This document shows, in pieces, positions 3,420 through 63,912 of a stretch of 64,000 bases of DNA. A program made the translations under genes and the position numbers. Under the pieces are notes generated by a model, which saw only the letters and a list, made by a program, of their open reading frames with translations, had not been told where the DNA came from and searched no databases. The stretch is taken from assembly GCF_032191835.1 (NCBI RefSeq), contig NC_083237.1, forward strand, positions 38,254,001-38,318,000, given 5' to 3'. The first letter of the stretch is position 1. The number at the start of each line of letters is the position of its first letter. Origin of the DNA: Heteronotia binoei (Eukaryota).

Positions 3420-4879
3420 TCCACAATCTTAAGCAGTAGGAAGAAGAAGAGTAATAAACTCATAGTTAGTTAGTCAGTCATGTCATTGTTCAGTTATATA
3501 TCTAATATAGAGTGAAATTCTTGCAGCAATTTAAAAAAAATCAAACAACGTTAAACCCCTTTTAGATGTGCTGATTCCAATAGTAGAGTTAAGCACATAC
3601 CTTCATCTCTAATTCTGATTGGATATTGTTTCAGTTTCTCTAATAAAAATTTCAGGTATAGGCTGAATTCTATTATTTTCTTCTTCAAATACTTTTTTCG
3701 AGTGTAAAAAATATTCTCAATTGAGAGTGGGTTTTTTTTTTCCTAATGGAGGAAGTGTTGCTGTAGTGGAATAAAAGTATTTCTTTGTTGAAGGATTTGT
3801 TCTCTGTTGGAGGAAGATATAGCAGAAAGGAAATCACAGCATAACGCACAGTTGAACATTCAGTCATAGAGCTCAATTAAGTCAATCTTTTCACTCAGAT
3901 TTGCCCAGTTGTCTCCTTACTACAACAACCACTTCATGGAACTTTTGTCTGTGCAGGTTCTGTATTCAGTTTCTATATGGTCAAAGAGGATTCTTCTCCA
4001 TTTTCACAAGCAGAATCCAATCCATAATGTTCAGATTGGTTACCTTGTTCATAAGGTACAGACTCCTGTTAAAATGAGCAGAACTCACATTGCCTTATTA
4101 AAATTAACATCACAGTTAAAAGCCCTATTTTAATAGCTAAGTGCATGCTATGTTGTCTTTAAATCTTTGCAAGAGTTCCAATAAAGATAACATCCACAAA
4201 CTCCTTGCATGTTTGAATATTGCATTGAAACAGCACCTGATTTATTTCTTTTTCCTACTCCAATATTTCAGTTCTTTCAGTTGTTTCTATTTGCACATAA
4301 CTTTACCAGAGGTACGTCTTAATTTTTTTTGGCTGCAAACATAAGACAAAATACGCTAAACAAGATTATATATGAAGGCCACTGGATGCTTTTCTGATTT
4401 ATTTTTTCCCCTGGAAAGACAACATTGCTTTTGCCTGTGACAAAACCAACCATTTAAACAAATCAATCATATCTTAAGATGATCTGGAACTGTCAATATC
4501 TATTGGTTGTCTTATTGTTATGACAACTTTATTCCAGATATGACAGGGTTTTTTTACACATACATACACATCCATCCATCCAAAAGTTTTGTAAACCGTA
4601 CTATATAATGCTGGAACATCTTTAAAATCACAATGTATTTCATATAAATCAATATGAAATAAGTATTCTTCATTTAAAAATTGCAAGGACCAGACGAGTC
4701 TGTACTAGTATTCAAATTCCCAGAATGCAATCTGCATTGCTGAGATAGGTACAACATTGTAGTTTAGTGGATTAATGAAAGAACAGTGTTGTGTTATTTA
4801 TATATAATAAATAGCATTACTTACTAGAAAAGAAAATGTCTTCATGTACAAGAACAGTTAATTCCTATGTAGATAGATC

Positions 4880-15319: not shown

Positions 15320-15727
15320 TTGCCCCCCCAGTCGGAATGAAGAGGCAGACACAATGTGTTGGGTATAAAAACTGGGCTGCTTTATTGAAAGAACTTGTCA
15401 CACCTATAACTGGCAGGGATTGGGCCTAGAAGGACAAGCCCTAGGGTCACCCCCTGACCCCGCCTTGTCCTGAAGGGTGAGCAACCCTGCCCCCAGCACA
15501 AGCCCACCGTATTCGGGTTGTTGCTGAGCGGCCAGGCCCCAAGCCATTCTCCACCTGGGCTAGCATCAATCCCCCATGGAAAGATCCGCCCAGGTGAGGC
15601 TTTTCCGTGAACTGCATTCCCCGCACTGAGCCGTGTAGCCCATCTGCAGTTCATACAAACCATCCGCACCCCTGGTGCTAGGCCATAGGTGCTCCCCTGA
15701 AAACACTGGCCAAAACATCCTCCAGCC
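15320..15727 (-). repeat. Ngaro terminal repeat B2 (about 405 bp), contains the poly(A) signal
   Basis: Direct repeat of 16086-16491; AATAAA on the minus strand (plus strand tttatt near 15382). Confidence 0.92.
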
Positions 15728-15895
15728 TGTGACCGAACAAATCATACTAACAAACCCTAACACTACAAGGCAGTACAAGGTAGGCGAAAAACAACTCCAC
15801 AAGGGCCAATTCTGTGAAGATGAAAAAATTTCTACCTGGCCCCTTATAAGGCGACCGGTTGAAACCTGTACTGCCAAAAGGGGAGGGCAGGCGGG

Positions 15896-16085
15896 CAGAG
15901 AGCCCGAAACAACTGCGTAGCTCTGGGCGGGGCTGGGGCTTATATAGCCCCGACGCCCGCCCAGAAAAAGCACCCGGATGCGCCGGGGCTGTCACTTTTC
16001 TGCTCCCTCCTTCCGAGGGGGCAAAGATGGCCCCCTGCCTAAACGACGGCGATGCCGTCTCGGCTGGGAAGGGGCCGGACCTTGC
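15896..16085 (-). repeat. Ngaro repeat A2 (about 188 bp)
   Basis: Direct repeat of 21802-21989, about 14 substitutions counted by eye, many at CpG. Confidence 0.92.
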
Positions 16086-16491
16086 CGCCCCAGTCGGAAT
16101 GAAGAGGCAGATACAATGTGTTGGGTATAAAAACCGGGCCGCTTTATTGAAAGAACTTGTCTAACCTATAACTGGCAGGGATGGGGCCTAGAAGGACAAG
16201 CCCTGGGGTCATCCCCTGACCCTGTCTTGTCCTGAAGGGCGAGCAACCCTGCCCCCAGCACAAGCCCGCCATATTTGGGTTGTTGCTGAGCGGCCAGACA
16301 CCAAGCCATTCTCCACCTGGGCTAGCATCAATCCCCCATGGAAAGATCCGCCCAGGTGAGGCTTTTCCGTGATCTGCATTCCCCGCACTGAGCCGTGTAG
16401 CCCATCTGCGGTTCATCCAGACCACCTGCACCCCTGGTGCTAGGCCATAGGTGCTCCCCTGAAAACACTGTGGCCAAAACATCCTCCAGCC
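16086..16491 (-). repeat. Ngaro repeat B1
   Basis: Direct repeat of 15320-15727; abuts A2. Confidence 0.92.
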
Positions 16492-16520
16492 ACCGCCAAC
16501 GCTAAGCCTCTGCTTAGGCA

Positions 16521-17116
16521 TTAGCACCCCAACGGACGGCCCAGAGCCGACTGCAATTCCTGCTGAATCTCCTTTAGAAAGGCCCAGTTGCCCAACTCCG
16601 AAAGATGGACCCCATCCGGCCGATACAGATCGGCATCTTCGACCCGTATGGCCGGATGAGGGAGAAAAAGCCCTAAGCCATTTTCCATGGCTTTCTGCAG
16701 GGCCCTGTTGATCTTGCGTCTAGCGCACTCTATCCCACCAGGTGAAAGGGCGAACCTCCAAATCCTGCGTGGCAATATTGCGGACCATACCAGGACCACA
16801 CCTGGCCGTCTTCGCTTAATTTCCTGGAGATCGGCCAGTGCCTGCAGCGAGAGGGCTTTCCCTTGCATCAATCCTAAGTCATTCCCGCCCAAGTGAATGA
16901 CCAATATGTGCGGAGGAGGTGCCGTCCTCTCTCTGAATAACAATGGCATAATACCCGGCCTGCGGAGGCCACGGCGACCCAGCCACTCCACCACAGCACA
17001 CTCGCTGAGGCCCAGCTGGGTGCCCACTGGAGACCGCCTGGCTTGATGGGCCGCCCAGAACACCATGCTGTGCCCGCAGATGAGAATACGACGCCTCTCA
17101 CTATGAGCCACAGCAC
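16521..17116 (-). CDS. Ngaro SGNH/GDSL-type hydrolase exon with no ATG of its own
   Basis: ICGHS (block I Ser), GRRG (block II), HLGGND (block III) and DGVH (block V) are all present; the ORF track starts it at a GTG. Confidence 0.88.
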
Positions 17117-17145
17117 CTGAAAAAACAGAAAATAGTCAAAAACAG
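17117..17145 (-). promoter_or_regulatory. Predicted 3' splice site upstream of the SGNH ORF
   Basis: Minus strand ...tttttgactattttctgttttttcag|GTGCTGTG: branch-like tgac, polypyrimidine tract and CAG. Confidence 0.75.
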
Positions 17146-17189
17146 ATAATAGCAATGGGCAATAAAACAGTCGCCTCCAAACCTACCCT

Positions 17190-18229
17190 CTAGGTGACCA
17201 ACAGGCGCACGTAGGTTTTAAAAGCTGCAGACCACCACTGGCCAATATGCTGGATAGTGGAGGGAGTGTAACCCATCATAGCAGCTGTGGAAGCGGCCCC
17301 AATCCGGAATGAATGCGTTCTGAACTTGACGCCTGGCTCGTCATGGCCCAAAACTGATATTTGGTAAGAGGGGAGCCCTCGTAATGCCTAAAAAAGGGGC
17401 CTTCGTCCTCACCCCTAAGGCGTGTGTAATGTTCAATGGCCAGAACCGGGCACAACTCGGGCAAAACACACTGCCCAATTGTGATGCTTGACCCCCTCTG
17501 TCGTTGATCAGTTTTGGACCGCCGGACCGTCAAAATAACCTGCTTCTGCCCAATTTTGACATCCCTGGCCTGAAGTGCCCATCCCGAAGTGTCAGTCTTA
17601 GATTGCACCACCACCTCACTAATGCATAACGTGCCAAAAAAGGCCATCAAGGAGGCTGCATGAAACAGAGCGGCCTCGAAAGGGGAAGAACATATACCCG
17701 GCCAAATCCCAAACAGCCCTTTAAGTACTGAAGGGGATATGGGTTGCCGGGCATCCACCCGCGGACCACACTTTCTGGCCCAACCTTCCAACATCTTCCG
17801 GACCCTGAAATCATCCGTATTCTCTGGGAACCCCGGAGCTTTGGTGATAAAGGCCAACGCCGCCAGTTGACCCCTAATTGTCTTCAGCCCCAAACCTCTC
17901 TCTTTCTGGTAAACACAGAACTGCATGATATGCGCCGTCGAAACCGGCCAACTATCGTGCAGTCCAGCAGTGCTCCTAAAAGCCCGGAACTGGGAAGCCG
18001 CCCTGTCATATGCCCTATTGGTACTGGGTGCCAAAGCTAGGCGAATGGCCCGACCGGCCTCTGCTTCCCAAGCTGCCAGAGGTCCAGAGGCATTCGGGTT
18101 GGCCACGGGTCCGCTTCTGAGGCAAGTTGACGGAAACGCTCCATCTGTTGACGAGACAGAGCGTCCGCCACCCTGTTGCACACTCCAGGTACATGCCTCG
18201 CCAGGAATAGAATATTCAACCGGAGGCAA
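17190..18229 (-). pseudogene. Ngaro tyrosine recombinase (frameshifted)
   Basis: VRRSKTDQ and LTKYQF; after a frameshift THSFRIGAASTAA...FKTYVR to TAG at 17190. The first catalytic Arg is replaced (FFGTLCISE versus FFGALRIS in the second element). Confidence 0.92.
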
Positions 18230-19877
18230 TGAAGTGTAAATGACCTTACCAAGTTCATCACAGATTTTGAGGACAAGGAGTTGATAACATGTACTACTGC
18301 CATGTTATCGCACCAGAAAATCATGGAATCTGGGCAAGCTGCTCAGCCCAGAGCCAAACGGCTACTAGAATAGGAAAAAATTCTAAAAAGGTAAGATCCC
18401 TACAGAGCCCATTGTCCAACCATTCTGCAGGCCACTGCTCGGCACACCAGCGGCCCCGAAAGTACACCCCGAAACCATTAGATCCGGCAGTGTCCGAGGA
18501 GATCTGAAGCTCGGCTTCAATCTTCAAATCTTCCCACCAAAAGGAAACACCGTTAAATGATTCCAAAAACTCCTCCCAGACCTCCAGGTCCGCCCGCATA
18601 CCGGCAGTCACTCGGACCCGATGGAGAGGGAGCCGCAACTGCTTCATAGCGTCACAGAGATGCCTCAAAAAGGCCCTACCGGGTGCCACCACTTTGCATG
18701 CAAAGTTGAGGTGGCCCACCACCTGCTGCAGTTCGAGCAGCAAAACCTTCCGCTGTTTCCTCAGCGCAGCTAACCGAATCTTAAGATCCGCAACCTTATT
18801 CTCAGGGAGCCGTGAAGCCTGCTGGACGGTGTCCAGCTCAATGCCTAAGAACGTAAGCACAGTACTGGGCCCCTTGGTCTTCTCATGCGCCAAAGGTACT
18901 CCGAGCTTGAGGGCTAACTCCTGAAAGGACTGTAACAACCTGCCGCATTGCCCCGAGCCCGCTGGACCCACAAAAATGTAGTCGTCCAGGTAATGCGCAG
19001 TATCGCTAAGCCCGGACCTGTCCCTTAACGCCCATTCCACAAAAGAGCTAAAGCGCTCGAATGCGGCGCAGGATACCGAACAACCCATCGGTAGGGCACG
19101 GTCCATATAAAATTTACCTTCAAAACAAAACCCCAGAAGCTCAAAATCATCCGGGTGAACTGGCAAGAGGCGAAATGCCAACTTAATGTCGCATTTCGCC
19201 ATCTCGGCCCCGACGCCGCAACCCCTAACTACCTTGACCGCCTGGTCAAAGGAAGTGTACCATACCGAACATAATTTGTCTGGTATAGCGTCGTTCACCG
19301 ATGCCCCTTTTGGGTAAGACAGATGATGAATAAGGTGATATTCCCCGGGCGCCTTCTTGGGGACCACCTCCAAGGGGGATACACGCAATACGGGTACAGG
19401 AGGGGCATCCAAGGGTCCCAAGACCCGATCCTCCTGGCACTCTTTGGCTATCTTAGCCCTAACCACGTGCTCAAGGCCTGCCACCGAACGAAGATTAGAA
19501 GCCAAACAAGGGGCCCTAGGACCCTGGTAAGGGATCCGAAACCCAAGAGAAAATCCATTCCACAAATACTCGCCGTCAGCTTTACGCGGGTACTTGCTCA
19601 GTAAACTACTGAGCACCCTCAGACGAATGGGGCTGGGCCCCTTTTCCAGGGGGCTGCTGATTGCCTCTGCCGCCGGGGCACTTACCCCCGGCCCTTGGCT
19701 TTGACCGACTACAAGCAGAGAGGGCGTGAGCCCCGCCACAGAGTGGGCACTCATGCTTGAATTTGCAGGGTTTTCTGGGGCACACGCCCTTCGATGCAAA
19801 CTCCCAGCATAACAGCCGGGCTTGAACCACCTGGCCCGCCATAACGTGGGCCCCTGCAGAAAGCTGCTGTTTGTCAA
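18037..19877 (-). pseudogene. Ngaro reverse transcriptase-RNase H (one frameshift near 18321)
   Basis: KCDIKLAFRLLP, LPMGCSVS, HYLDDY, TFLGIELDT; RNase H SDTAGSNGFG, LEFFPI, WCDNMAVV and NRVADALSR. Confidence 0.95.
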
Positions 19878-21141
19878 CTAAATGTCCGCTATCGGACCTG
19901 TCCCCTGAATTTGGCTTTGCCGGGGACATCAACTGCAGCCAAAGCTGCTGGTTGATCTGGTCCCATGGCAACCCCGGGTTAACGGTGGCCCTCATGTGAA
20001 AGGCCTCGTCGTATTGCAGCCAAGCTGTGCCGACGAAATCCGAAATCTGTGCCGATGAAATCGCGAGCCGGCTGCGCCCTTGCGATAACGCCTGTGTATA
20101 TCAGGAAACCGGGCAGCCAATTAGCCCAGGTCCGATCCACTTTCCTGCGCTTCAACTTCTCCTTTTCTTTGTCGTCACGTTCCTCCTTGTCCTTTTTCTC
20201 TAACTCTCTGAAGAGGAGGCTGAAAACATCTACGTATTCTCCACGTAGTATCTTATCCCGCGTGGCTGCCGTTAGATGGTCCCCCAACGTGGCCGCCGTT
20301 AAATGGTCCCCCAACGGCAACGCTGTTTTGCCATATGGGAGCATATGAAACGGGATGCTCGCATATGGATTTGGTGGGTAAAACCAAATACCCCTCTGAA
20401 AATTCGGCCACGCCCCCTGCATCTGCGCGTATTGCTGCCTGCCCCAGGGTAACATGCTGGGAGGGGCCTGCACTGTAGAACCCACCTGTGATGCGGCCAG
20501 GTTGGCCGGTAGGCCAGCGGTCATTAGACCTGGGCTGCCCACTACAAAACCTTGGGGGGCTGCTCCCTGATAGCCCCAAGCCCAAGACAGACACATACCC
20601 CCTTGATCGGCAGATGGTCCACCCTGTCCAAAAACCCACGGTGCTCCCGCTGCTGCAGTAGGGGGGGGGGCGGTAAGTGTGTAGGACCCCAGGGCCACAC
20701 CTGCAGCTACAGAAGGGGAGGCTTACCAACATTCCCAGGGAACGCAACTGCGCCTGCTGGCGGCTGCTGCACGACCTCTTCCGACGCCCCATTGCCATAC
20801 AGCTCTTCTGACGGGCCCTCGTCTGGGTCATCCTCTTGGTCTGGTTCTTGATGTGGTTCAAGCCAAGGCGCTCCACCCTGCAAAGCAGACAGACGAGCCA
20901 GTACTTATTTCTCAAAGGTCAGGCGTGTGGAGCGTCCCGTCACACGGCGACACCCTTCCCAAATGGGAGCTCCCGTAGCGGCTTTCTGTTGTTCCAGGGT
21001 GTCCAACTGGCCTATAATGGCCTGTCTCACTTGGGCCTCTTGCCCTGGGTCCTCAACGGGGCCATGCTGCTGTCCCCATCCCCAAGGGGGTCGGGCAGGT
21101 TGCTTGCCCTTAGATTTACCCTGCCCTTTTTTTGGCACCAT
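19606..21141 (-). pseudogene. Ngaro gag-like ORF1 (stops and frameshifts)
   Basis: MVPKKGQGKSKGK start; LGDHL...KILRGEYVDVFSLL; C-terminal Cys/His finger CWEFASKGVCPRKPCKFKHECPLCGGAHALSAC; aligns with gag at 58807-60320. Confidence 0.88.
20721..20729 (-). promoter_or_regulatory. Predicted 5' splice donor in gag (phase 1)
   Basis: Minus strand TTG|GTAAGC; the exon ends at 20727, 415 nt from the gag ATG at 21141. Confidence 0.7.
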
Positions 21142-21801
21142 ACTGATGTCCTACTAGCACACCCAGGCACAGCCACTACCAACCCCCCTCCAGTAAACCT
21201 TCCCAACAGGCCCAAAATTACCACCGTTACACTCCTCCCACGTGGTGAGTGGGGAGGGGGGGCAAGGGAAGCTGATACTGAATAAAGCAGAAGGCAACAA
21301 TGGGGGGGGGTGGCAACAGGCAGAAGCCAGGCACACACAGCCCCCTAAACACCCAACTGTAACACCCAAGCCAGGGCTCCACCCAGGATATGGTGGGGGG
21401 GGGGAGTTGAGGAGAGCAATGTGAATACAACGTTCACCAATGCCCCTTCCCTGGCCTGCTAAAACTATGGGCTGACGGAGCACTTTTCCAAACTTCTCAT
21501 CCTGGGGGGGGGGGAATGTGATACCCAGTCAGAGCACCCCACACAAACCCTTTCCCCAAAATACTATCCACCCCCTTGCTTCCCAAAGGAAAAAACCGGG
21601 AACCACCGGAGTCAGCCGCCGCTTGCACCTCAAGCCCCGCTCGCGCCCAAAGCTGGGAAACGCCAGAAAAAGCCACCGCTCGTGCCTGCCACCCACCGTC
21701 CGCACAGCATGCAGTCGTTCGCACCCAAAGCCGCCGCTCCAGTAAGTCCCATGATGCTCCCAGGCCTTCCTCCTCGCAGTTCCCCACACGTGGCTCTCCC
21801 T

Positions 21802-21989
21802 CAGAGAGCCCGAAACAACTGCGTAGCTCTAGGCGGGGCCGGGGCTTATATAGCCCTGACGCCCACCCAGAAAAAGCACTCAGATGTGCCGGGTCTGTCA
21901 CTCTTCTGCTCCCTCTTTCCGAGGGGGCAAAGACGGCCCCCAGCCTAAACGACGGCGATGCCGTCTCGGCTGGGAAGGGACCGGACCTT
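21802..21989 (-). repeat. Ngaro 5' repeat A1 with TATA-like motif and GC box
   Basis: Minus strand gggctatataagccccggccccgcc; repeated at 15896-16085 and homologous to 58123-58310. Confidence 0.9.
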
Positions 21990-22439
21990 CCCTTGGATGA
22001 AATCACAAGGGTGGGGGAGAACCTATTTGGGCTCAGCGTGGGACAGTTGATCAATCAGGTAGGGGCTGGCTTTGTTCCTGTTTAAAATAAAGAATGGCTT
22101 ACTCTTTATAAGAAATTTATAAATATTTGTCTTCATGAGGTCTCATTGCTGCATTGCTTGCATTTTGAGAGCTTTATGCAAACTATAGAATTGAAGGTTT
22201 GGAACCAAATAAAATAAATGTTTGGCTTGCTCCATATAGAAAAGTGGGTGGTTCCTTCATGAAGCTTTAGTGCTTGTATCCATGGAGAGTGTTTTGGCCA
22301 GCAATGAAATGGAAGGCGTTGAACATGCTTTTTAAAAAAGATACTCCTTCATTACATACAGCTTAACAAGAAGACATTAAGATTACTGATGAAGTGGCAA
22401 AACGAAACATGTCTATTATAAATAGTTATGCTGTAGTAT

Positions 22440-57793: not shown

Positions 57794-58347
57794 AAATCTT
57801 TTAACAAGTTAAGTTCAAGTTAATTACAAGTGTATTACATTTTTTTTCTTCTCTTTTTCTTTTTCTTTCCTTTCCCCGATTTTATTTTATTTTTAAATAC
57901 TGTATTATAACTATTATAAATATTATTATCTTCAGTTTGTATTTTGTTTTTAAGGGTCGTTATTGTTATGTATTTTGTTTACTAAGCTTACGATGCTATT
58001 CCTGTTGATCCTAACGGTAAACTTCTTGTCTTATGGATTGTAAGCTATTTTTACGTATCAATAAAATTGTTTAAAATGAAAAAAAAATTGTTAAAGGTAG
58101 ACAAGAAGCAAAAGTAAAAGATGACAAAATCTGGCCCCTCCACAGCCTTGCTGTGTCAGCAGCTATAGGCTGTGGGGCCGCTTTTGCTGCCCCAGAGGAT
58201 CGGTGAGGCTGCCAGTTCCTGGGCATCCTGTTGAAGGGCGGGGCATTGGGGCTATATTAGCCCTGACCCCGCCCAGAGCCACACAGTTGTGTTTAGGCTC
58301 TTGGCTCTGTGCTGAGAGCGAAGGCCAGCAGGTGTGTCGGGCGAACT

Positions 58348-58454
58348 GTGGCAGCAGCAGCCAAGTAGGGAGGCACCTTTGAGTGGCAGAAAGAAGTGGC
58401 AGCAGCAGCCAAGTAGGGAGGCACCTTTGAGTGGCAGAAAGAAGTGGCAGCAGC
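58348..58454 (+). repeat. 48-bp tandem repeat (2.2 copies) in the Ngaro 5' leader
   Basis: gtggcagcagcagccaagtagggaggcacctttgagtggcagaaagaa starts at 58348 and 58396, with a partial copy at 58444. Confidence 0.9.
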
Positions 58455-59236
58455 GTTTTTTTCGGCGCTGTCGGCAGCCGGGATGGGTGCCTCGGGGGGC
58501 AAACGGAGTGGTGGCAGAAGGCAGCAATCAGTGGGTGTGGCCAGGCCAGGTGTCTCCAGCTGGGGCAGAGCCACAGAGGACCCAAAGTAATGCGGGGAAG
58601 GCCAAGAGGGGGCGGTTTTATTTGGGGCAGTCTGCCTGGCGGGAGTCAGTTGGGAGTAGAGAGGACAGCCTTAGCTAGGTGCTTGTATCTTTGGGCAGGG
58701 AGTATCCTGGCTTGATTTATAAGAGCATTGAACACACATCCCCCAGGTGGTACAAAGAATAAATAAATACATAAAATGGTGGATAGGACAGCGGTGGGGG
58801 TTACACATGGGGCCCAAGAAGGGAGAGGGCCCTTCCAAGGGTAAGCAACCAGCCAAGCCCCCCAGGAAGAGGAGTCAACCGGCCACACCCAGGAAGGTTG
58901 TTGGGGATGAGATCCAGATGCGGCAGGCCATTATCGACAAGCTAGGGGCCCTTGAGAGGGACAGGGGGTTGGCCAGTGCACCCTCATCATGGACAGGGCA
59001 CCATAGAGCCATGGGGTGGTCTGGCACGTTGACATTCAAGAGGGAGGTGCTGGCCCATCTTTCTGTGTTGCAGGAGGGAGAAGAGCAGATGGAAGGGTCT
59101 TCCCAGCAGAGTCAAGATGTGGTGCCAAGTGGGGGTGTGCTGCATAATGAGGACATTGAGAAGCAAGAAGAGGCAGAGTTGGAGCAGCCGGGGTCATCAA
59201 TGGCAGTGGCTGTGGAGGTGCCACCACCGCTGAAAG

Positions 59237-59245
59237 CAGGTAAGA
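59237..59245 (+). promoter_or_regulatory. Predicted 5' splice donor in gag (phase 1)
   Basis: CAG|GTAAGA; the exon ends at 59239, 433 nt from the gag ATG at 58807. Confidence 0.72.
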
Positions 59246-62200
59246 CCCAGCAGACATCACTCCCCCAGGTCTGGCCATGGGGTCCTTGTGTGCAGCCTTC
59301 AATGCCGGGGTCGGCAAGTACAGCCGGCTGGAGCTCCCCAATGCTGGGGAAGGTGCCATGGGCATACCCAAGCCAGCCAGGGCCTTCCTGGGCAGGGGCA
59401 ATGTACCCCCCTTCAAGCCTAGCCCAGTGTAGCTCAACTGTTACAGGCCAGCTCCAGGTTTCCATGGGAACTGCTGGGCCGTCTCAGGGCAGTGCCACAA
59501 ATCAGGCTGCTCCTGGGGTTCTCCCATGGGGTGGGTGGCCTAGTTTCCAGTGGAATGCATGGAGTTACCCACCCAATCCATATGGATCGGTATTTTTTCA
59601 GGCCCTTCCCTATGGTGATTCGGCAATGCCTTTGGGTGATCACCTGATGCCAGCCACAAGGGAGAAGATTTTGAGGAGGGAGTATGTTGACGTGTTTGGC
59701 CTTGTGTTTAGGGAGTTGGAGAAAAAGCCAAAGGAAAAGGAGAAGCTGAAACACAGGAAGGTCGACTGGACATGTTTGAATTGGTTGCCTGGGTTTCTAA
59801 TCTATGTGGGGGTCATTGCGAGGGCGCAGCCTTTCAGGGCAGCACCTTTGTTTCAGTATTGTGATATTGTATATTGGGCCTACAGCAACTTCATCGGGGT
59901 GGCCTGGCTACAATATGATGAGGCCTTCAGGATGATGGCCGCATTCAACCCATTCATGCCATGGGACCAGATAAATCTATAGTTGTGGCTGCAACTTATG
60001 ACCCCTGCAAAACTTAATGCGGGGGACAGGGCTGACAGCGGCCATGTGGTTCATAAGCTGCAGACCGCTCCTAGAGCCCGCACACCTGCAGGTCAGTCGG
60101 TTCAATCCCAACTATTGTGCTAGGAATTCATGTCCCAGAGCGTGTGCTCCTGCAGCGCCTGTAAATTTAAGCATGAGTGCCAGTTATGCAGGGGGCCTCA
60201 TGCCTTTTCCTCATGCAGCAAGACCAAGCCAAAAGGAGGTGGCAAGCACCCGGGAGAGGGTAACAACCCCCCACCGCCTGGTAAAGGGACCCACCCGCAT
60301 TCGGCTGACAATGCTTAGGTGGCTGTTAGAGGGTTATCCCATGCCAGCCGACAGGGCCTATTTGCTGGAGGGTTTCACATACGGTTTTTGGATACCTTAC
60401 CAGGGCCCTCGGGCTCCTTGTATAGCATCCAATCTTTGTTCTGTAGTGGGGATGGAGCATGTGGCCTGGGCAAAAATCGCTAAGAATTGCGCAGAGGGAC
60501 GAGTGCTCAGCCCCTTTGAAGCCCCTTCCAGTGCCACACTTGAGGGTGTCTCCCCTCGGGGTGGTGCCTAAGAAGGCACCTGGTGAATACAGGCTCATTC
60601 ACCACCTGTCATATCCATGGGGGGGGGGGGGTCGGTGAATGATGCCATTCCCGATCAGCTCTGTTCAGTTCAATATACATCCTTTGACCAGGCGGTTCAG
60701 AGTGGTATGGGGGTGCGACCTGGGGGCAGAAATGGCAATATGCTGCCAGTGTACACTGGGGATTTATGTTTGAAGGAAAATATTATATGTACAGGGCATT
60801 GCCGATGGGTTGCTCAATCTCCTGTGCAGCCTTTGAGCACTTCAGTTCCTTTCTGGAATGGGCACAGCAAGTCAAGTCTGGGTTGAAAGAGATGGTTCAT
60901 TACCTGGATAACTACCTTTTTGTGGGCCCCACGGACTCTGGACAATGTTTCAGGCTGCTTGATGCATTTGTACAGTTAGCTGGGGAACTTGGAGTCCCGC
61001 TGGCACATGAGAAGACGGAGGGTTACGCCTCTGTGCTAACGTTTCTGGGCATTGAGTTGGACACTTTCCGGCAAACTTCACGACTTTCTGCGGACATGGT
61101 CCAGAGACTCAGGGACTGATTAGCAATGCTCAGAGGGCAAAGCAAGGTGTCCCTGCTGGAGCTTCAGCAGCTAGTGGGGCATCTTAATTTTGCCTGCAAA
61201 GTTGTGGCACCTGACAGGGCATTTCTAAGGCGGCTATGTGACGCCATGAGCTCCCTCCGACTTCCCAACCATAGAATAAGGATAACTGCGCGTATGCAGA
61301 GGGATCTAGAGGTTTGGAAGGAATTTTTGAAGTCCTTCAATGGGGTTTCATTCTGGAGCGAGGACATGAGGATTGAGGCTGACCTCCAGATATCTTCAGA
61401 CACTGCACGTTCCACAGGTTTTGGGGTAATTTTCTGGGGGCACTGTTCTGCGAAGCAATGGCCCAGGGAATGGTTGGCTAGTGGACTCTGCAGGGATCTC
61501 ACTTTTCTGGAATTTTCCCCCATTGTCAAGGCCGTTTGACTCTGGGGGTACCAGCTAGCCAACCATGTGGTGCATTTCTGGTGTGACAACATGGCAATGG
61601 TACATGTTATCAGCACTTTGTCTCCAGATCGGCACCCATGATGAATCTGGTCAGTCTTTATGCTGCGATGCCTATGACTAAACATGTTTTTTTATGGCTA
61701 AGCACATGCCAGGTGTTTGTAATGGGGTGGCAGAAGCTCTGTCTCACCAACAGATGGAGCGTTTCTGCCAGCAGGCTTCAGAAGCTGACCCCTGGCCGGT
61801 GCGGATGCCCCAAGACATATGGCAGCTTGGAGGGCCGAAGCCGGTAGGGCAATTCTGCAAGCCTTAGCTCCAAGTACTAGGAGGGCATATGAAAGAGCGG
61901 CCTTGCATTTCCGGGTGTTCAGAGATGCCGCTGGATTACAGGACCTTTGGCCCATCCCTGTTATCCATTTGATGCAGTTTTGCATCCAACAAAAGGACAG
62001 GGGACTAACGATAAAAACTGTTAGAAAGCAGCAAGCTGCCTAGACATTTGTTAGTAAGGCCCAGGGGTTTAAAGAGGCTACAGGGGATTTCAGAATTTTA
62101 AAAATGTTGGAGGGTTGGTCCAGGGAACGCGGGCAATGGGTGGTTGCCCAGCAGCCCATTTCCCCCTCTGTACTTAAGGGGCTGGGTCAAGTGTGGCTGG

Positions 62201-62794
62201 AAGTGTGTTGATCCAGTTTTGAGAGCACACTTTTACACACAGCAGCACTAATAGCCTTTTTCGGGGCCCTGAGAATTAGCAAGCTGGTAGTGCAATCCCG
62301 GCAGGACCAGTCCAATTGCGCTCTTCGTGCCAGGGATGTAAAATTTAATGGTGACCAGGTCATTTTGACAGTTAGACGATCCAAAACAGACCAAAAGAGC
62401 AAGGGCATGGTAGTTACACTGGGCCCCTGTGGAGAAGCGGAGTTGTGCCTGATTAAGGCCCTGCAACAGTAAGTGTCAATTAGAGGGCACACCGAGGGAC
62501 CACTATTTTGCCATAGCGACGGTTCTCCATTGACCAAATACCAATTTTGGGCGGTAACCACATGGGCATTAGATAAGCTGGGGCTAGAGGATGTCAAATT
62601 TGGCACCCACTCATTCAGGATTGGTGTGGCTTCCACAGCGGCAGCAATGGGCTACCCTGGTCCAGTAATTCGGAGGGTGGGTTGGTGACATTCCTCGGCC
62701 TTCTGGTCTTATGTGCGTCCCTTGCTCTCTGTGTGAGCAAGGAAAACGCAGAGTTAATTTAGTAATGGCCACGGTGGGCAAGTTACTGTTCTTG

Positions 62795-62818
62795 GTTTGA
62801 CTGTTTGTTTCCTTATAG
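62795..62818 (+). promoter_or_regulatory. Predicted 3' splice site upstream of the SGNH ORF
   Basis: tttgactgtttgtttccttatag|GTGCTGTT. Confidence 0.75.
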
Positions 62819-63912
62819 GTGCTGTTGCTCGCCATGAGAGGCTGAGGATCCTCATTTGTGGGCACAGCATGGTGTTGGGGCAAAGTGAATTGGGGCTCAG
62901 TGAATGGGCTGTGGTGGAGTGGCAGGGGCGCCAGGGTCTACAATGGCCAGGGCTCCTGCCACTATTGTTTCAGGGGGGGACTGGTCCTCCACCTCACATA
63001 CTGGTCATCCACCTTGGTGGGAATGACCTTGGGTTTATGAAAGGGAAGGCCCATTCCCTGCAGGTGGAGGCTGATCTCCAGGTCATCGTGCAGAGGTGGC
63101 CCGGCATCCTCCTAGTTTGGTCTGCAATCCTTCCTTGCAGAGTTTGGCATGCCACCTGGGACCTGGCAGGCATTGAGAGGGCCAGAAGGAAGGCAAACCA
63201 GGCCCTTCAGAAGGTGATGGAGGGGGGCCTGGATATTTTCCTTCCCCACCCGACCATCTGGGTTGAAATGGAGGAGCTCTATCGATCCAATGGAGTTCGC
63301 TTGTATGAACAGGTATGAATGAACTTTATTACAGTCATAGACCAATATAAAAACTATAACACATCATATAAAACCCTCCTAAAATACCTAAGATAGTATA
63401 AAATACCCTCCTAAAAAAACATACAATACAATAAAATACATAAACATTTCCCCACCTATACAATCCAAGAGAACTAAAATATAATTTAACCAATTTTAAA
63501 ATTCAAGTCAGTTCCAATTTATATAAATCCTTTAAATCAGAGTATATAAAAACATTTATAAACTAAAATTCCAAGAGATCATACAAGACATGCAGTTTCT
63601 TGTTTCTTAGTATGGAACTTCACAAGATAATGGCAAAATTTGGCTATCTGTCTAGAGATAGTTGGACTTGCATCCACCAATAGTTTCTCCAAACATGCCT
63701 CGTCCGCGTCTGCCATTGGTTTAACTACAAACGGGGAAACAAACCTATCCCTCTGTACTTGGTGGAAAGGGCATTTCCCTTTCCCTGTTCATTCATACCT
63801 GTTCATACCAATGGAGTTCGCTTGTAAGACTTGGGTAACTGGGCCTTTTTAAATGACCTATGGCATGGGCTTTGGGGAGCTCTGGGCCATCCGGTGGGCA
63901 CTAATGCATAAG
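62819..63912 (+). pseudogene. Ngaro SGNH hydrolase exon, damaged
   Basis: ICGHSMV and HLGGND; about 10-aa deletion after GHSMV; DGVH changed to NGVR; LINE insertion at 63304-63807; resumes with LGNWAFL. Confidence 0.85.
63304..63807 (-). mobile_element. 5'-truncated LINE (RTE-X-like C-terminus) with an inverted copy of its own tail at the 5' end
   Basis: Minus strand encodes KCPFHQVQRDRFVSP...LEKLLVDASPTISRQIAKFC and ends aataaagttcattcatacctgttcata; 17-bp TSD ccaatggagttcgcttg (63287-63303, 63808-63824). Confidence 0.8.

What the first reader, a model, noticed from the sequence alone, without database searches (positions are those of the whole stretch)
58807..63318. The divergent second Ngaro independently preserves the same phase-1 donor and acceptor pair
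Seen in sequence: this element differs substantially from element 1, yet has CAG|GTAAGA at the equivalent gag position (exon ends 59239, 433 nt = 144 codons + 1). Its acceptor tttgactgtttgtttccttatag|GTGCTGT (exon starts 62819) lies 82 nt after the YR stop, versus 73 nt in element 1. Splicing the 3579-nt intron gives ...PPLKA-G-AVARHERLRILICGHSM..., again in frame. Both donors are encoded as Gly-Lys (G|GT AAG) in otherwise poorly conserved low-complexity gag sequence, and both second exons begin GTGCTGT. Inference: conservation of both sites and their phase across subfamilies indicates selection on splicing rather than chance.
Basis: partly seen in the sequence, partly recalled or inferred. 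Interest (0 to 1): 0.8.

Follow-up and report, generated by a model that had tools for sequence, protein, structure and literature searches.

The report
Spliced Gag-esterase message in Ngaro retrotransposons
A decayed jumping gene in a lizard genome keeps the splice signals that let active relatives skip 3.6 kb and make a start-codon-less esterase from the Gag start, a gene-expression strategy I could not find described for this class of element.

Summary
Exon 1 is 58807-59239 (433 nt, phase 1), with donor CAG|GTAAGA. The acceptor is TTCCTTATAG|GTGCTGT at 62819. The intron is 3579 nt and the join is in frame.

The same two-exon, phase-1 structure occurs in nine other Ngaro copies from six species (five squamates and one frog), plus a deleted remnant. 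One of those copies carries no hydrolase gene model. RefSeq holds many 'uncharacterized protein' models that are exactly this Gag-N::SGNH-hydrolase fusion.

The same donor also serves a second acceptor in front of the tyrosine recombinase (YR) ORF, which likewise has no ATG. RefSeq lists both products as isoforms of one locus. Both window elements keep that acceptor too.

- Element 2 is a dead copy. It has at least 17 stops, has lost the hydrolase Asp/His, and carries a 502-bp insertion that creates the false ORF end at 63318. The conservation therefore reflects selection on its active progenitors.
- I obtained no RNA reads. Transcript support is indirect: RefSeq isoforms, host-gene exon capture and one intronless contig.
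- Papers I could search mention the hydrolase ORF ('function unknown') but no splicing.
- First readers noted the same idea on other DNA of this genome. None of the Ngaro notes shown to me carried a follow-up.

The parts
58253..58260 (+). TATA-like box (TATATTAG) in the 5' region of element 2. Inferred promoter of the primary transcript.
   Evidence: Read. Element 1 has the homologous block GGGCTATATAAGCCCC...CAGTTGT at 21852-21845, inside its A1 repeat. Promoter function is inferred and was not tested.
58807..59239 (+). Exon 1: Gag start codon plus 144 codons and 1 nt (basic N-terminus and two predicted helices).
   Evidence: It is homologous to the N-termini of RefSeq fusion proteins (MPPKKG.G.SKGKQPAK...). 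The helices come from the model of relative P0005.
59240..59245 (+). 5' splice site GTAAGA (CAG|GTAAGA), phase 1.
   Evidence: rank 1 of 298 GTs; G|GTRAG kept in 8 of 8 copies, counting Anolis GTAAAG.
58807..59982 (+). Unspliced ORF1 (Gag), open for 391 aa through the donor. Gag homology continues to 60312 with 2 stops.
59240..62818 (+). 3579-nt intron holding the rest of gag, RT/RNase H and YR.
60023..61831 (+). RT/RNase H remnant, broken into several frames with 8 stops in the aligned pieces.
   Evidence: tblastn with the intact Eublepharis element L001. The RVT_1 Pfam hit is on element 1 and L001.
61739..61753 (+). Second acceptor (CTCTGTCTCACCAACAG|ATGGAGCG). Exon would start at 61754 in the YR frame, compatible with phase 1.
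   Evidence: The same site is used by RefSeq Gag-N::YR isoforms. It is inferred for this copy.
61687..62736 (+). Tyrosine recombinase remnant (7 stops). Natural stop TGA at 62734-62736.
62796..62818 (+). Candidate branch point TTTGACT (A at 62800), pyrimidine tract and AG of the hydrolase acceptor.
   Evidence: The tract is 68% pyrimidine against 47% element-wide. TTGAC/TTAAC sits at the same place in element 1, L001 and L018.
62819..63305 (+). Exon 2, first part: SGNH hydrolase (ICGHSM and HLGGND blocks present).
   Evidence: Pfam PF13472, E=1.5e-4. tblastn shows 59% identity to the L001 hydrolase.
63306..63807 (.). 502-bp insertion with ~19-nt terminal inverted repeats, flanked by a 19-nt duplication (CCAATGGAGTTCGCTTGTA). 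It interrupts the hydrolase.
63808..63911 (+). Exon 2, remainder. Block V reads NGVR instead of DGVH, there is an in-frame TAA at 63825-63827, and the natural stop is 63909-63911.
   Evidence: Element 1 has DGVHLS at this point.
20727..21141 (-). Element 1 exon 1 (415 nt, phase 1; one in-frame TAA). Donor GTAAGC at 20726-20721.
16521..17116 (-). Element 1 exon 2: intact 196-aa SGNH hydrolase with no Met before the GHS motif.
18144..18153 (-). Element 1 YR acceptor (CGTCAACAG|ATGGAGCG). Exon would start at 18144.
15320..21992 (-). Element 1 with split direct repeats: A1 21992-21802, B1 16381-16082, A2 16086-15896, B2 15619-15320.

Best explanation
Both window elements are dead copies of two diverged subfamilies of Ngaro, a tyrosine-recombinase retrotransposon of the DIRS order.

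In active members, one primary transcript serves unspliced as genome and as Gag mRNA. How RT/RNase H is made is not addressed here. A 5' splice site about 120-145 codons into gag (G|GTRAG, always phase 1) can be joined to either of two 3' splice sites. One lies in the 3' end of the RT/RNase H ORF and opens the YR frame. The other lies in the short spacer after the YR stop and opens the SGNH-hydrolase frame.

Both downstream ORFs lack a usable start codon. Splicing therefore donates the Gag AUG and yields Gag-N::YR and Gag-N::hydrolase fusion proteins.

Shown here:
- the sites, their phase and their conservation;
- the absence of an ATG in the downstream ORFs;
- matching annotated isoforms in RefSeq.

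Inferred:
- that the junctions are used in RNA in vivo;
- that the shared Gag N-terminus (basic stretch plus two helices) directs both enzymes to the Gag/RNA particle, as Gag-Pol fusion does in retroviruses.

The hydrolase is a cytoplasmic-type SGNH esterase of the PAF-acetylhydrolase Ib fold. Its substrate is unknown.
For: (1) Element 2 and element 1 give in-frame phase-1 joins.

(2) RefSeq proteins of 323-343 aa from Eublepharis, Anolis, Rhineura, Hemicordylus and Elgaria start with the Gag N-terminus and continue into the hydrolase.

(3) I mapped the gene models to DNA. Eublepharis L001-3 has exon 1 of 421 nt and an intron of 3615 nt. Anolis has 385/3451, Rhineura 421/3572-3574, Hemicordylus 370/3528 and the frog Mixophyes 364/3640. 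All are GT..AG and all are phase 1.

(4) L001 is an intact element with gag of 518 aa, RT/RH, YR and hydrolase. Three loci encode the identical 340-aa fusion, so this is a young multicopy family and not a host gene.

(5) The hydrolase ORF has no Met before the catalytic GHS in 5 of 7 copies. In the other two, the only Met lies inside the intron. In-frame stops lie 21-192 nt upstream of exon 2.

(6) Heteronotia copy L019 has only its YR annotated, so it was not selected by any hydrolase gene model. It still has GAAG|GTAAGC at 424 nt (phase 1), TGTTTTAG|GTGCTGTGG and CGGCAG|ATGGAGCG.

(7) Gag-N::YR isoforms exist. P0288 and P0029 are isoforms X1 and X2 of one Hemicordylus locus and share exon 1. 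P0259 and P0109 (Anolis sagrei isoform models) share the same exon-1 sequence. P0288 equals my same-donor solution.

(8) Host genes capture these exons. DUSP12 isoform X1 of Heteronotia uses a Ngaro remnant's donor GAGG|GTAAGC and acceptor TTTCTAG|GC. A Gekko DUSP12 isoform X1 (P0238) also matches the hydrolase but was not mapped. VGLL4 and SPRYD4 isoforms in a snake and a caecilian also end in this hydrolase domain; they are named but were not mapped.

(9) One 1677-nt Logan contig (L011) carries an intronless Gag-N+hydrolase ORF of 394 aa.
Against: No RNA-seq or DNA run was listed for either element, so no junction read was seen.

RefSeq models may rest partly on protein alignments or ab initio prediction. 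That extra isoforms require transcript evidence is my understanding of NCBI's pipeline and was not checked here.

L011 may be a DNA retrocopy rather than RNA, and its genomic parent is unknown.

The YR acceptor has no marked pyrimidine tract.

Some lacertid and amphibian models read from the YR C-terminus straight into the hydrolase (P0131, P0151, P0187). Other lineages may therefore use a different route.

The splice scores are from a crude home-made matrix. In five loci the sites were chosen by a gene finder, so their ranks are not independent tests.
Confidence: 0.8

Rival explanations
1. The splice sites are real, but the spliced RNA is a minor by-product. The hydrolase and YR would be made mainly by another route: frameshifting or termination-reinitiation on the genomic RNA, an internal promoter, or a YR-hydrolase readthrough protein.
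For: Models with the YR C-terminus fused directly to the hydrolase exist in other lineages (P0131, P0151, P0187). The YR ORF overlaps the RT/RH ORF, the classical setting for frameshifting. The YR acceptor is weak by composition.
Against: In the gecko-type elements a YR stop and in-frame stops separate the two ORFs. The hydrolase start lies about 4 kb from the 5' end, out of reach of scanning ribosomes. An unused site would not keep G|GTRAG, its phase and a pyrimidine tract across squamates and a frog.
Confidence: 0.1
2. It is coincidence plus annotation artefact. GT and AG dinucleotides are common, and gene finders join any open frames, so the fusion models and the reader's prediction repeat the same error.
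For: No RNA was seen here. In five loci the sites were selected by Gnomon. Ranks by my matrix are modest in some copies: donor rank 9-10 in element 1 and Anolis, acceptor rank 24 in Rhineura.
Against: The window's two copies, the unannotated L019 and the remnant L018 show the same sites without any hydrolase model guiding the choice. Donor positions -1, +1, +2 and +4 are invariant in an otherwise unalignable stretch. Phase 1 holds in every copy mapped. Two acceptors share the phase. Neither downstream ORF has a start codon.
Confidence: 0.05
3. The intron exists chiefly for regulation: it removes RT/YR to limit transposition, or marks the RNA for export or decay. The fusion protein would be incidental.
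For: Spliced retroelement RNAs cannot serve as full genomes, so splicing lowers genome RNA. The function of the hydrolase is unknown (PMC9210276, PMC6681497).
Against: The hydrolase ORF is kept open with an intact Ser/Asp/His in many young copies. The join is always in frame, which regulation alone would not require.
Confidence: 0.05

Closest known systems
Ngaro elements with a hydrolase ORF after YR (Goodwin & Poulter 2004, as cited in PMC9210276; Repbase DIRS-53_XT and DIRS-54_XT of Xenopus)
   Same: Same element class and gene order: gag, RT/RH, YR, SGNH hydrolase, with split direct repeats and no methyltransferase.
   Different: The papers I could read describe four overlapping ORFs and call the hydrolase's function unproven. 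None mentions an intron, a Gag fusion or how YR and the hydrolase are translated. I could not read the two primary reviews.
env mRNA of avian leukosis / Rous sarcoma virus (own knowledge: the 5' splice site lies six codons into gag, so Env starts at the gag AUG)
   Same: A single donor just inside gag, an acceptor in front of a downstream ORF, and the gag AUG donated to the downstream product.
   Different: Here 121-144 Gag codons are carried over, not six. The products are a recombinase and a cytoplasmic-type esterase with no signal peptide or membrane anchor visible in the sequences. The element integrates with a tyrosine recombinase, not an integrase.
Spliced subgenomic RNAs of LTR retrotransposons (Drosophila gypsy env, copia gag mRNA; own knowledge)
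   Same: Splicing is used to set the ratio of products from one retroelement transcript.
   Different: Those elements are Ty3/gypsy and Ty1/copia elements, and no Gag-tagged enzyme fusions are made.
Esterase domain of LINE ORF1p (zebrafish ZfL2-1, PDB 4c1b)
   Same: An SGNH-type esterase carried by a retroelement next to a helical, possibly oligomerising segment. It is the best PDB sequence hit of the fusion protein.
   Different: The hit is weak (E=0.099). In LINEs the esterase is part of ORF1p itself and no splicing is involved.
PAF acetylhydrolase Ib alpha subunits and bacterial GDSL/sialate O-acetylesterases (PDB 1wab, 3dt6, 2hsj, 6njc)
   Same: Same fold by Foldseek (E about 1e-7 to 1e-5, TM 0.6-0.7 by target). 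The Ser, Gly, Asn and Asp-x-x-His blocks are conserved.
   Different: Sequence identity is only 14-21%. The substrate here is unknown. UniRef's '1-alkyl-2-acetylglycerophosphocholine esterase' names are automatic.

Membership tests
Ngaro (DIRS-order YR retrotransposon) | Reverse transcriptase/RNase H plus a tyrosine recombinase in one element | tested here: met
   RVT_1 is found in element 1 and L001, and Phage_integrase in L001 YR. Element 2 aligns to the L001 gag, RT/RH, YR and hydrolase in that order.
Ngaro (DIRS-order YR retrotransposon) | Split direct repeats A1 ... B1 A2 B2 | tested here: met
   Element 1 has A1 21992-21802 and A2 16086-15896 (93% identical), and B1 16381-16082 and B2 15619-15320 (94%). 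Element 2 cannot be tested because its 3' end runs off the window.
Ngaro (DIRS-order YR retrotransposon) | No methyltransferase domain (present in DIRS1/PAT) | tested here: met
   Pfam finds only RVT_1 in the 518-624-aa RT/RH ORFs. There is no room for a further domain between RT/RH and YR.
SGNH/GDSL hydrolase | Blocks I (GxS), II (G), III (GxND) and V (DxxH) with the Ser-Asp-His triad | tested here: met
   This holds for element 1 and all 20 aligned relatives: GHS, G, GGND and DGxH are invariant, PF13472 is hit and the fold matches.
SGNH/GDSL hydrolase | The same blocks in element 2 itself | tested here: not met
   Blocks I and III are present. Block V reads NGVR, followed by an in-frame stop, and the ORF is split by a 502-bp insertion. 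This copy cannot encode an active enzyme.
Retrovirus-type subgenomic spliced mRNA | Donor downstream of the gag AUG and acceptor upstream of an ORF that lacks its own start, joined in frame | tested here: met
Retrovirus-type subgenomic spliced mRNA | The spliced RNA is observed | not testable with these tools
   No run was listed, so read laying could not be used. Indirect support comes from RefSeq isoforms, exon capture by DUSP12 and the intronless contig L011, whose library type is unknown.

The most novel reading that the evidence does not exclude
Ngaro elements are 'complex' retroelements. One donor inside gag and at least two alternative acceptors produce Gag-N-tagged recombinase and Gag-N-tagged esterase. 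The shared 120-145-residue Gag N-terminus would act as an assembly tag that brings both enzymes into the Gag/RNA particle, doing by splicing what retroviruses do by Gag-Pol frameshifting. This would be the first expression mechanism defined for the YR and hydrolase genes of any DIRS-order element.
Probability: 0.45. Interest if true: 0.8.

Novelty: new variant of a known kind. Interest (0 to 1): 0.62.

Why it matters
How tyrosine-recombinase retrotransposons translate their downstream genes has been left open. The papers I could search list overlapping ORFs and call the hydrolase's role unknown.

A conserved, phase-locked donor with two acceptors gives a concrete model that is easy to test. 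It explains why the YR and hydrolase ORFs have no start codon. It predicts two fusion proteins that can be sought by proteomics or antibodies.

It also has a practical side for annotation:
- Hundreds of RefSeq 'uncharacterized protein', 'xerD homolog' and 'PAF acetylhydrolase-like' entries in reptiles and amphibians are transposon products.
- The strong hydrolase acceptor is captured by host genes (DUSP12 mapped here; VGLL4 and SPRYD4 isoforms end in the same domain but were not mapped), which creates chimeric isoforms.

Tried and rejected
- RNA evidence. The look-up of sequencing runs listed no run for element 2 (kind rna) or for the element 1 hydrolase (kind any). Read laying therefore could not be used.
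- SRR6291285, the source of the intronless contig, is named in no held paper. Whether it is RNA or DNA stays open.
- Goodwin & Poulter 2004 and Poulter & Butler 2015 are not held.
- Complex prediction on two copies of Gag-N residues 1-100 of P0005 gave 'no answer' (score 0.05). This is neither support nor evidence against self-association.
- P0033 (Elgaria) is not on record as a gene. The newt locus for P0066 came back without DNA.
- The Logan contigs for P0050 and P0061 are not Ngaro transcripts. They belong to a gene, probably of a fish, in which a long unrelated ORF is spliced onto a hydrolase exon.
- The RefSeq isoform lengths alone do not fix the YR junction, because 4-9 GT..AG solutions fit them. 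P0288 then confirmed the same-donor solution.
- The splice scores come from a hand-typed donor matrix and a simple pyrimidine count, and are used only for ranking.
- An env-like role for the hydrolase was considered and set aside. The fusion proteins show no signal peptide or hydrophobic anchor on reading them, and the fold neighbours are cytosolic esterases.


Full report
**What is there.** The window holds two Ngaro-type retrotransposon copies. Element 2 is on the plus strand from about 58130 to beyond the window end. Element 1 is on the minus strand at 21992-15320. Over RT they share about 66% nucleotide identity, so they belong to different subfamilies. Element 1 shows the split direct repeats that define Ngaro: A1/A2 are 93% identical and B1/B2 are 94% identical. 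Pfam finds RVT_1 and a GDSL-type hydrolase in element 1. tblastn with an intact gecko element places gag, RT/RH, YR and hydrolase in order on both copies.

**The observation.**
- Element 2 exon 1 is 58807-59239, 433 nt, phase 1, with donor CAG|GTAAGA.
- The acceptor TTCCTTATAG|GTGCTGT puts exon 2 at 62819.
- The intron is 3579 nt, and the YR stop lies 82 nt upstream of exon 2.
- The joined frame reads ...PPLKA-G-AVARHERLRILICGHSM.
- Element 1 has the same layout: 415 nt, phase 1, TTG|GTAAGC, TTTTTTCAG|GTGCTGTGG, a 3610-nt intron and a 73-nt spacer.
- The reported end at 63318 is an artefact. A 502-bp insertion with inverted ends (63306-63807) breaks the hydrolase, which resumes at 63808 and ends at 63909-63911.

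**State of the copies.** Element 2 is dead. The pieces aligned to an intact relative hold 17 stops: 2 in gag, 8 in RT/RH and 7 in YR. Hydrolase block V reads NGVR instead of DGVH. Element 1 is less decayed. It has one stop in exon 1 and frame breaks in gag, RT and YR, but its 196-aa hydrolase is intact. The splice signals in these two copies were therefore inherited from their active progenitors and are not maintained in place.

**Relatives.** A search with the element 1 hydrolase found many RefSeq 'uncharacterized proteins' of 323-343 aa in Eublepharis macularius, Anolis, Rhineura, Hemicordylus and Elgaria. They begin MPPKKG.G.SKGKQPAK..., like Gag, and continue into the hydrolase at exactly the predicted junction (...G|AV..R.RILICGHS). 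An exhaustive profile search gave 1628 relatives, many with an N-terminal extension of 100-250 residues. Named examples also come from Pogona, Podarcis, Zootoca, Anolis sagrei, several frogs and a caecilian.

**Gene structures.** I mapped the models onto their DNA. All are GT..AG and all are phase 1.

| Locus | Exon 1 (nt) | Donor | Acceptor | Intron (nt) |
|---|---|---|---|---|
| Eublepharis L001-3 | 421 | ATG\|GTAAGT | TTTTCTTAG\|GTGCTGTGG | 3615 |
| Anolis L004 | 385 | TAG\|GTAAAG | TTTTTCAG\|AAC | 3451 |
| Rhineura L005-8 | 421 | AGG\|GTGAGT | TTTCAACAG\|ATC | 3572-3574 |
| Hemicordylus L009 | 370 | TTG\|GTGAGT | GTCTTACAG\|ACT | 3528 |
| Mixophyes (frog) L010 | 364 | CAG\|GTGAGC | CCCTACAG\|ACC | 3640 |

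L001 is an intact element: gag of 518 aa, RT/RH, YR and hydrolase. Three loci encode the identical fusion protein. This is a young multicopy transposon and not a host gene.

**A copy not chosen by a gene finder.** The last look-up fetched a Heteronotia copy (L019) in which only YR is annotated. It has GAAG|GTAAGC at 424 nt (phase 1), TGTTTTAG|GTGCTGTGG after the YR stop with an in-frame join, and CGGCAG|ATGGAGCG before YR.

**Conservation.** I anchored eight copies at the donor. Positions -1, +1, +2 and +4 are invariant, +3 is always a purine and +5 is G in seven. The flanking 24 columns carry 0.0-1.0 bits, mostly under 0.7. In the Gag frame the donor reads Gly-Lys or Gly-Glu. That exchange reverses charge but keeps the purine at +3, which points to a nucleotide-level constraint. 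The 22 nt before the acceptor are 59-82% pyrimidine, against 46-51% element-wide. In element 2 the donor ranks 1 of 298 GTs and the acceptor 2 of 404 AGs by a crude score.

**Why a splice is needed.** In 5 of 7 copies the hydrolase frame has no Met between the upstream in-frame stop and the catalytic GHS. In the other two, the only Met lies inside the intron. In-frame stops sit 21-192 nt before exon 2, so readthrough from YR is excluded in these families. The unspliced ORF1 stays open through the donor: 391 aa in element 2 and 397-518 aa in intact relatives.

**A second acceptor.** At the Hemicordylus and Mixophyes loci a second product (449 and 421 aa) starts at the same ATG and ends at the YR stop. 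Using the same donor, an AG in the 3' end of the RT/RH ORF gives an open Gag-N::YR frame of exactly those lengths. The RefSeq protein P0288 is identical to that solution.
- P0288 and P0029 are isoforms X1 and X2 of one Hemicordylus locus.
- P0259 (YR) and P0109 (hydrolase) of Anolis sagrei share the same exon-1 sequence.
- Gecko proteins P0252 and P0253 show the same junction (E|DGALSP...). It corresponds to CAG|ATGGAGCG inside the RT/RH motif SRQQMERF.
- Both window elements keep this site, at 61754 in element 2 and 18144 in element 1.
- The YR frame has no Met upstream of its conserved domain in element 1 or in L001.

**Transcript evidence is indirect.** No sequencing run was listed for either element. 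Three lines of support remain.
- RefSeq lists alternative isoforms that share exon 1. As far as I know, NCBI's pipeline builds such isoforms from transcript alignments, but I did not check this here.
- Host genes capture the exons. DUSP12 isoform X1 of Heteronotia enters a deleted Ngaro remnant, leaves it at the Ngaro donor GAGG|GTAAGC and rejoins at the Ngaro acceptor TTTCTAG|GC. The remnant has no RT or YR. A Gekko DUSP12 isoform X1 (P0238) also matches the hydrolase but was not mapped.
- A 1677-nt Logan contig (L011) carries 448 nt of leader and an uninterrupted 394-aa Gag-N+hydrolase ORF that aligns end to end with the Pogona and Anolis fusion proteins. Its library type is unknown, and its genomic parent was not found. 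If the junction lies at the GT..AG borders, it would record a past splicing event whether the contig is RNA or a retrocopy.

**The protein.** A model of P0005 built from 20 relatives has a confident SGNH domain (pLDDT about 90-96 for residues 150-330). Two lower-confidence helices (36-54 and 69-94) precede it, followed by a disordered linker. Foldseek places the domain with PAF acetylhydrolase Ib alpha and bacterial GDSL or sialate esterases. The best PDB hit by sequence is the esterase of a zebrafish LINE ORF1 protein, but it is weak (E=0.099). I saw no signal peptide or membrane segment on reading the sequences, so the likeness to retroviral env lies in the expression mechanism only. That the shared Gag N-terminus brings YR and the esterase into the Gag particle is my inference. 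A self-association test gave no verdict.

**Literature.** The papers I could search state that some Ngaro elements carry a hydrolase ORF after YR 'with no proven function', and describe overlapping ORFs (PMC9210276, PMC7192593, PMC6681497). Searches combining Ngaro or tyrosine recombinase with splicing terms found nothing on natural splicing of these elements. The two primary reviews are not held, so an earlier mention cannot be excluded.

**Earlier notes of this scan.** First readers proposed the same fusion on element 1 of this window and on several other pieces of this genome. None of the Ngaro notes shown to me carried a follow-up.

**Verdict.** The finding is one instance of a general, conserved alternative-splicing scheme of squamate and amphibian Ngaro elements. 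The scheme is visible in public annotation but, as far as I could find, has not been described. Confidence that the sites function as splice sites in active relatives is about 0.8.

Noticed in passing
window 63306-63807: A 502-bp AT-rich insertion with ~19-nt terminal inverted repeats (TGAACAGGTATGAATGAAC...) sits in the element 2 hydrolase. It is flanked by a 19-nt direct duplication (CCAATGGAGTTCGCTTGTA), which is unusually long for a target-site duplication.
   Followed up: partly
L018:11403-13491 (Heteronotia binoei DUSP12 locus): DUSP12 'isoform X1' ends in two exons taken from an internally deleted Ngaro. A cryptic acceptor inside gag-N is followed by the Ngaro donor and the Ngaro hydrolase acceptor, 1.37 kb apart. 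A like-named isoform exists in Gekko japonicus (P0238), so the insertion may be old and shared.
   Followed up: partly
P0114, P0379: A VGLL4 isoform X5 of the snake Erythrolamprus and a SPRYD4 isoform X2 of the caecilian Rhinatrema also end in this hydrolase domain. These may be further cases of host genes splicing onto the Ngaro acceptor.
   Followed up: no
L012:1-1920, L015:817-1464: Logan contigs (probably from fishes, by their sequence relatives) carry a hydrolase of this family. In L012 it is the last part of a 639-aa unrelated ORF. L015 shows the matching genomic exon behind TTATTTCTAG|G. This looks like a host gene that acquired the domain.
   Followed up: partly
P0131, P0151, P0187, P0137: Some gene models read from the YR C-terminus directly into the hydrolase with no stop between them. 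Certain Ngaro lineages may make a YR-hydrolase fusion instead of using the spacer acceptor, or these models may be faulty.
   Followed up: no
window 58348-58454: A perfect 48-nt tandem repeat (2.2 copies) lies in the 5' leader of element 2, downstream of the TATA-like box at 58253-58260.
   Followed up: no
window 21852-21845 (-) and 58253-58260 (+): Both elements share the block GGGCTATAT(A/T)AGCCC...CC(T/C)AGAGC.AC.CAGTTGT in their 5' regions, although the leaders are otherwise unalignable. It is a likely core promoter and start site.
   Followed up: partly
L001:4259-6133: The RT/RNase H ORF overlaps the end of gag by about 300 nt in another frame and has no obvious start. How it is expressed (frameshift or a third acceptor) was not examined.
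   Followed up: no
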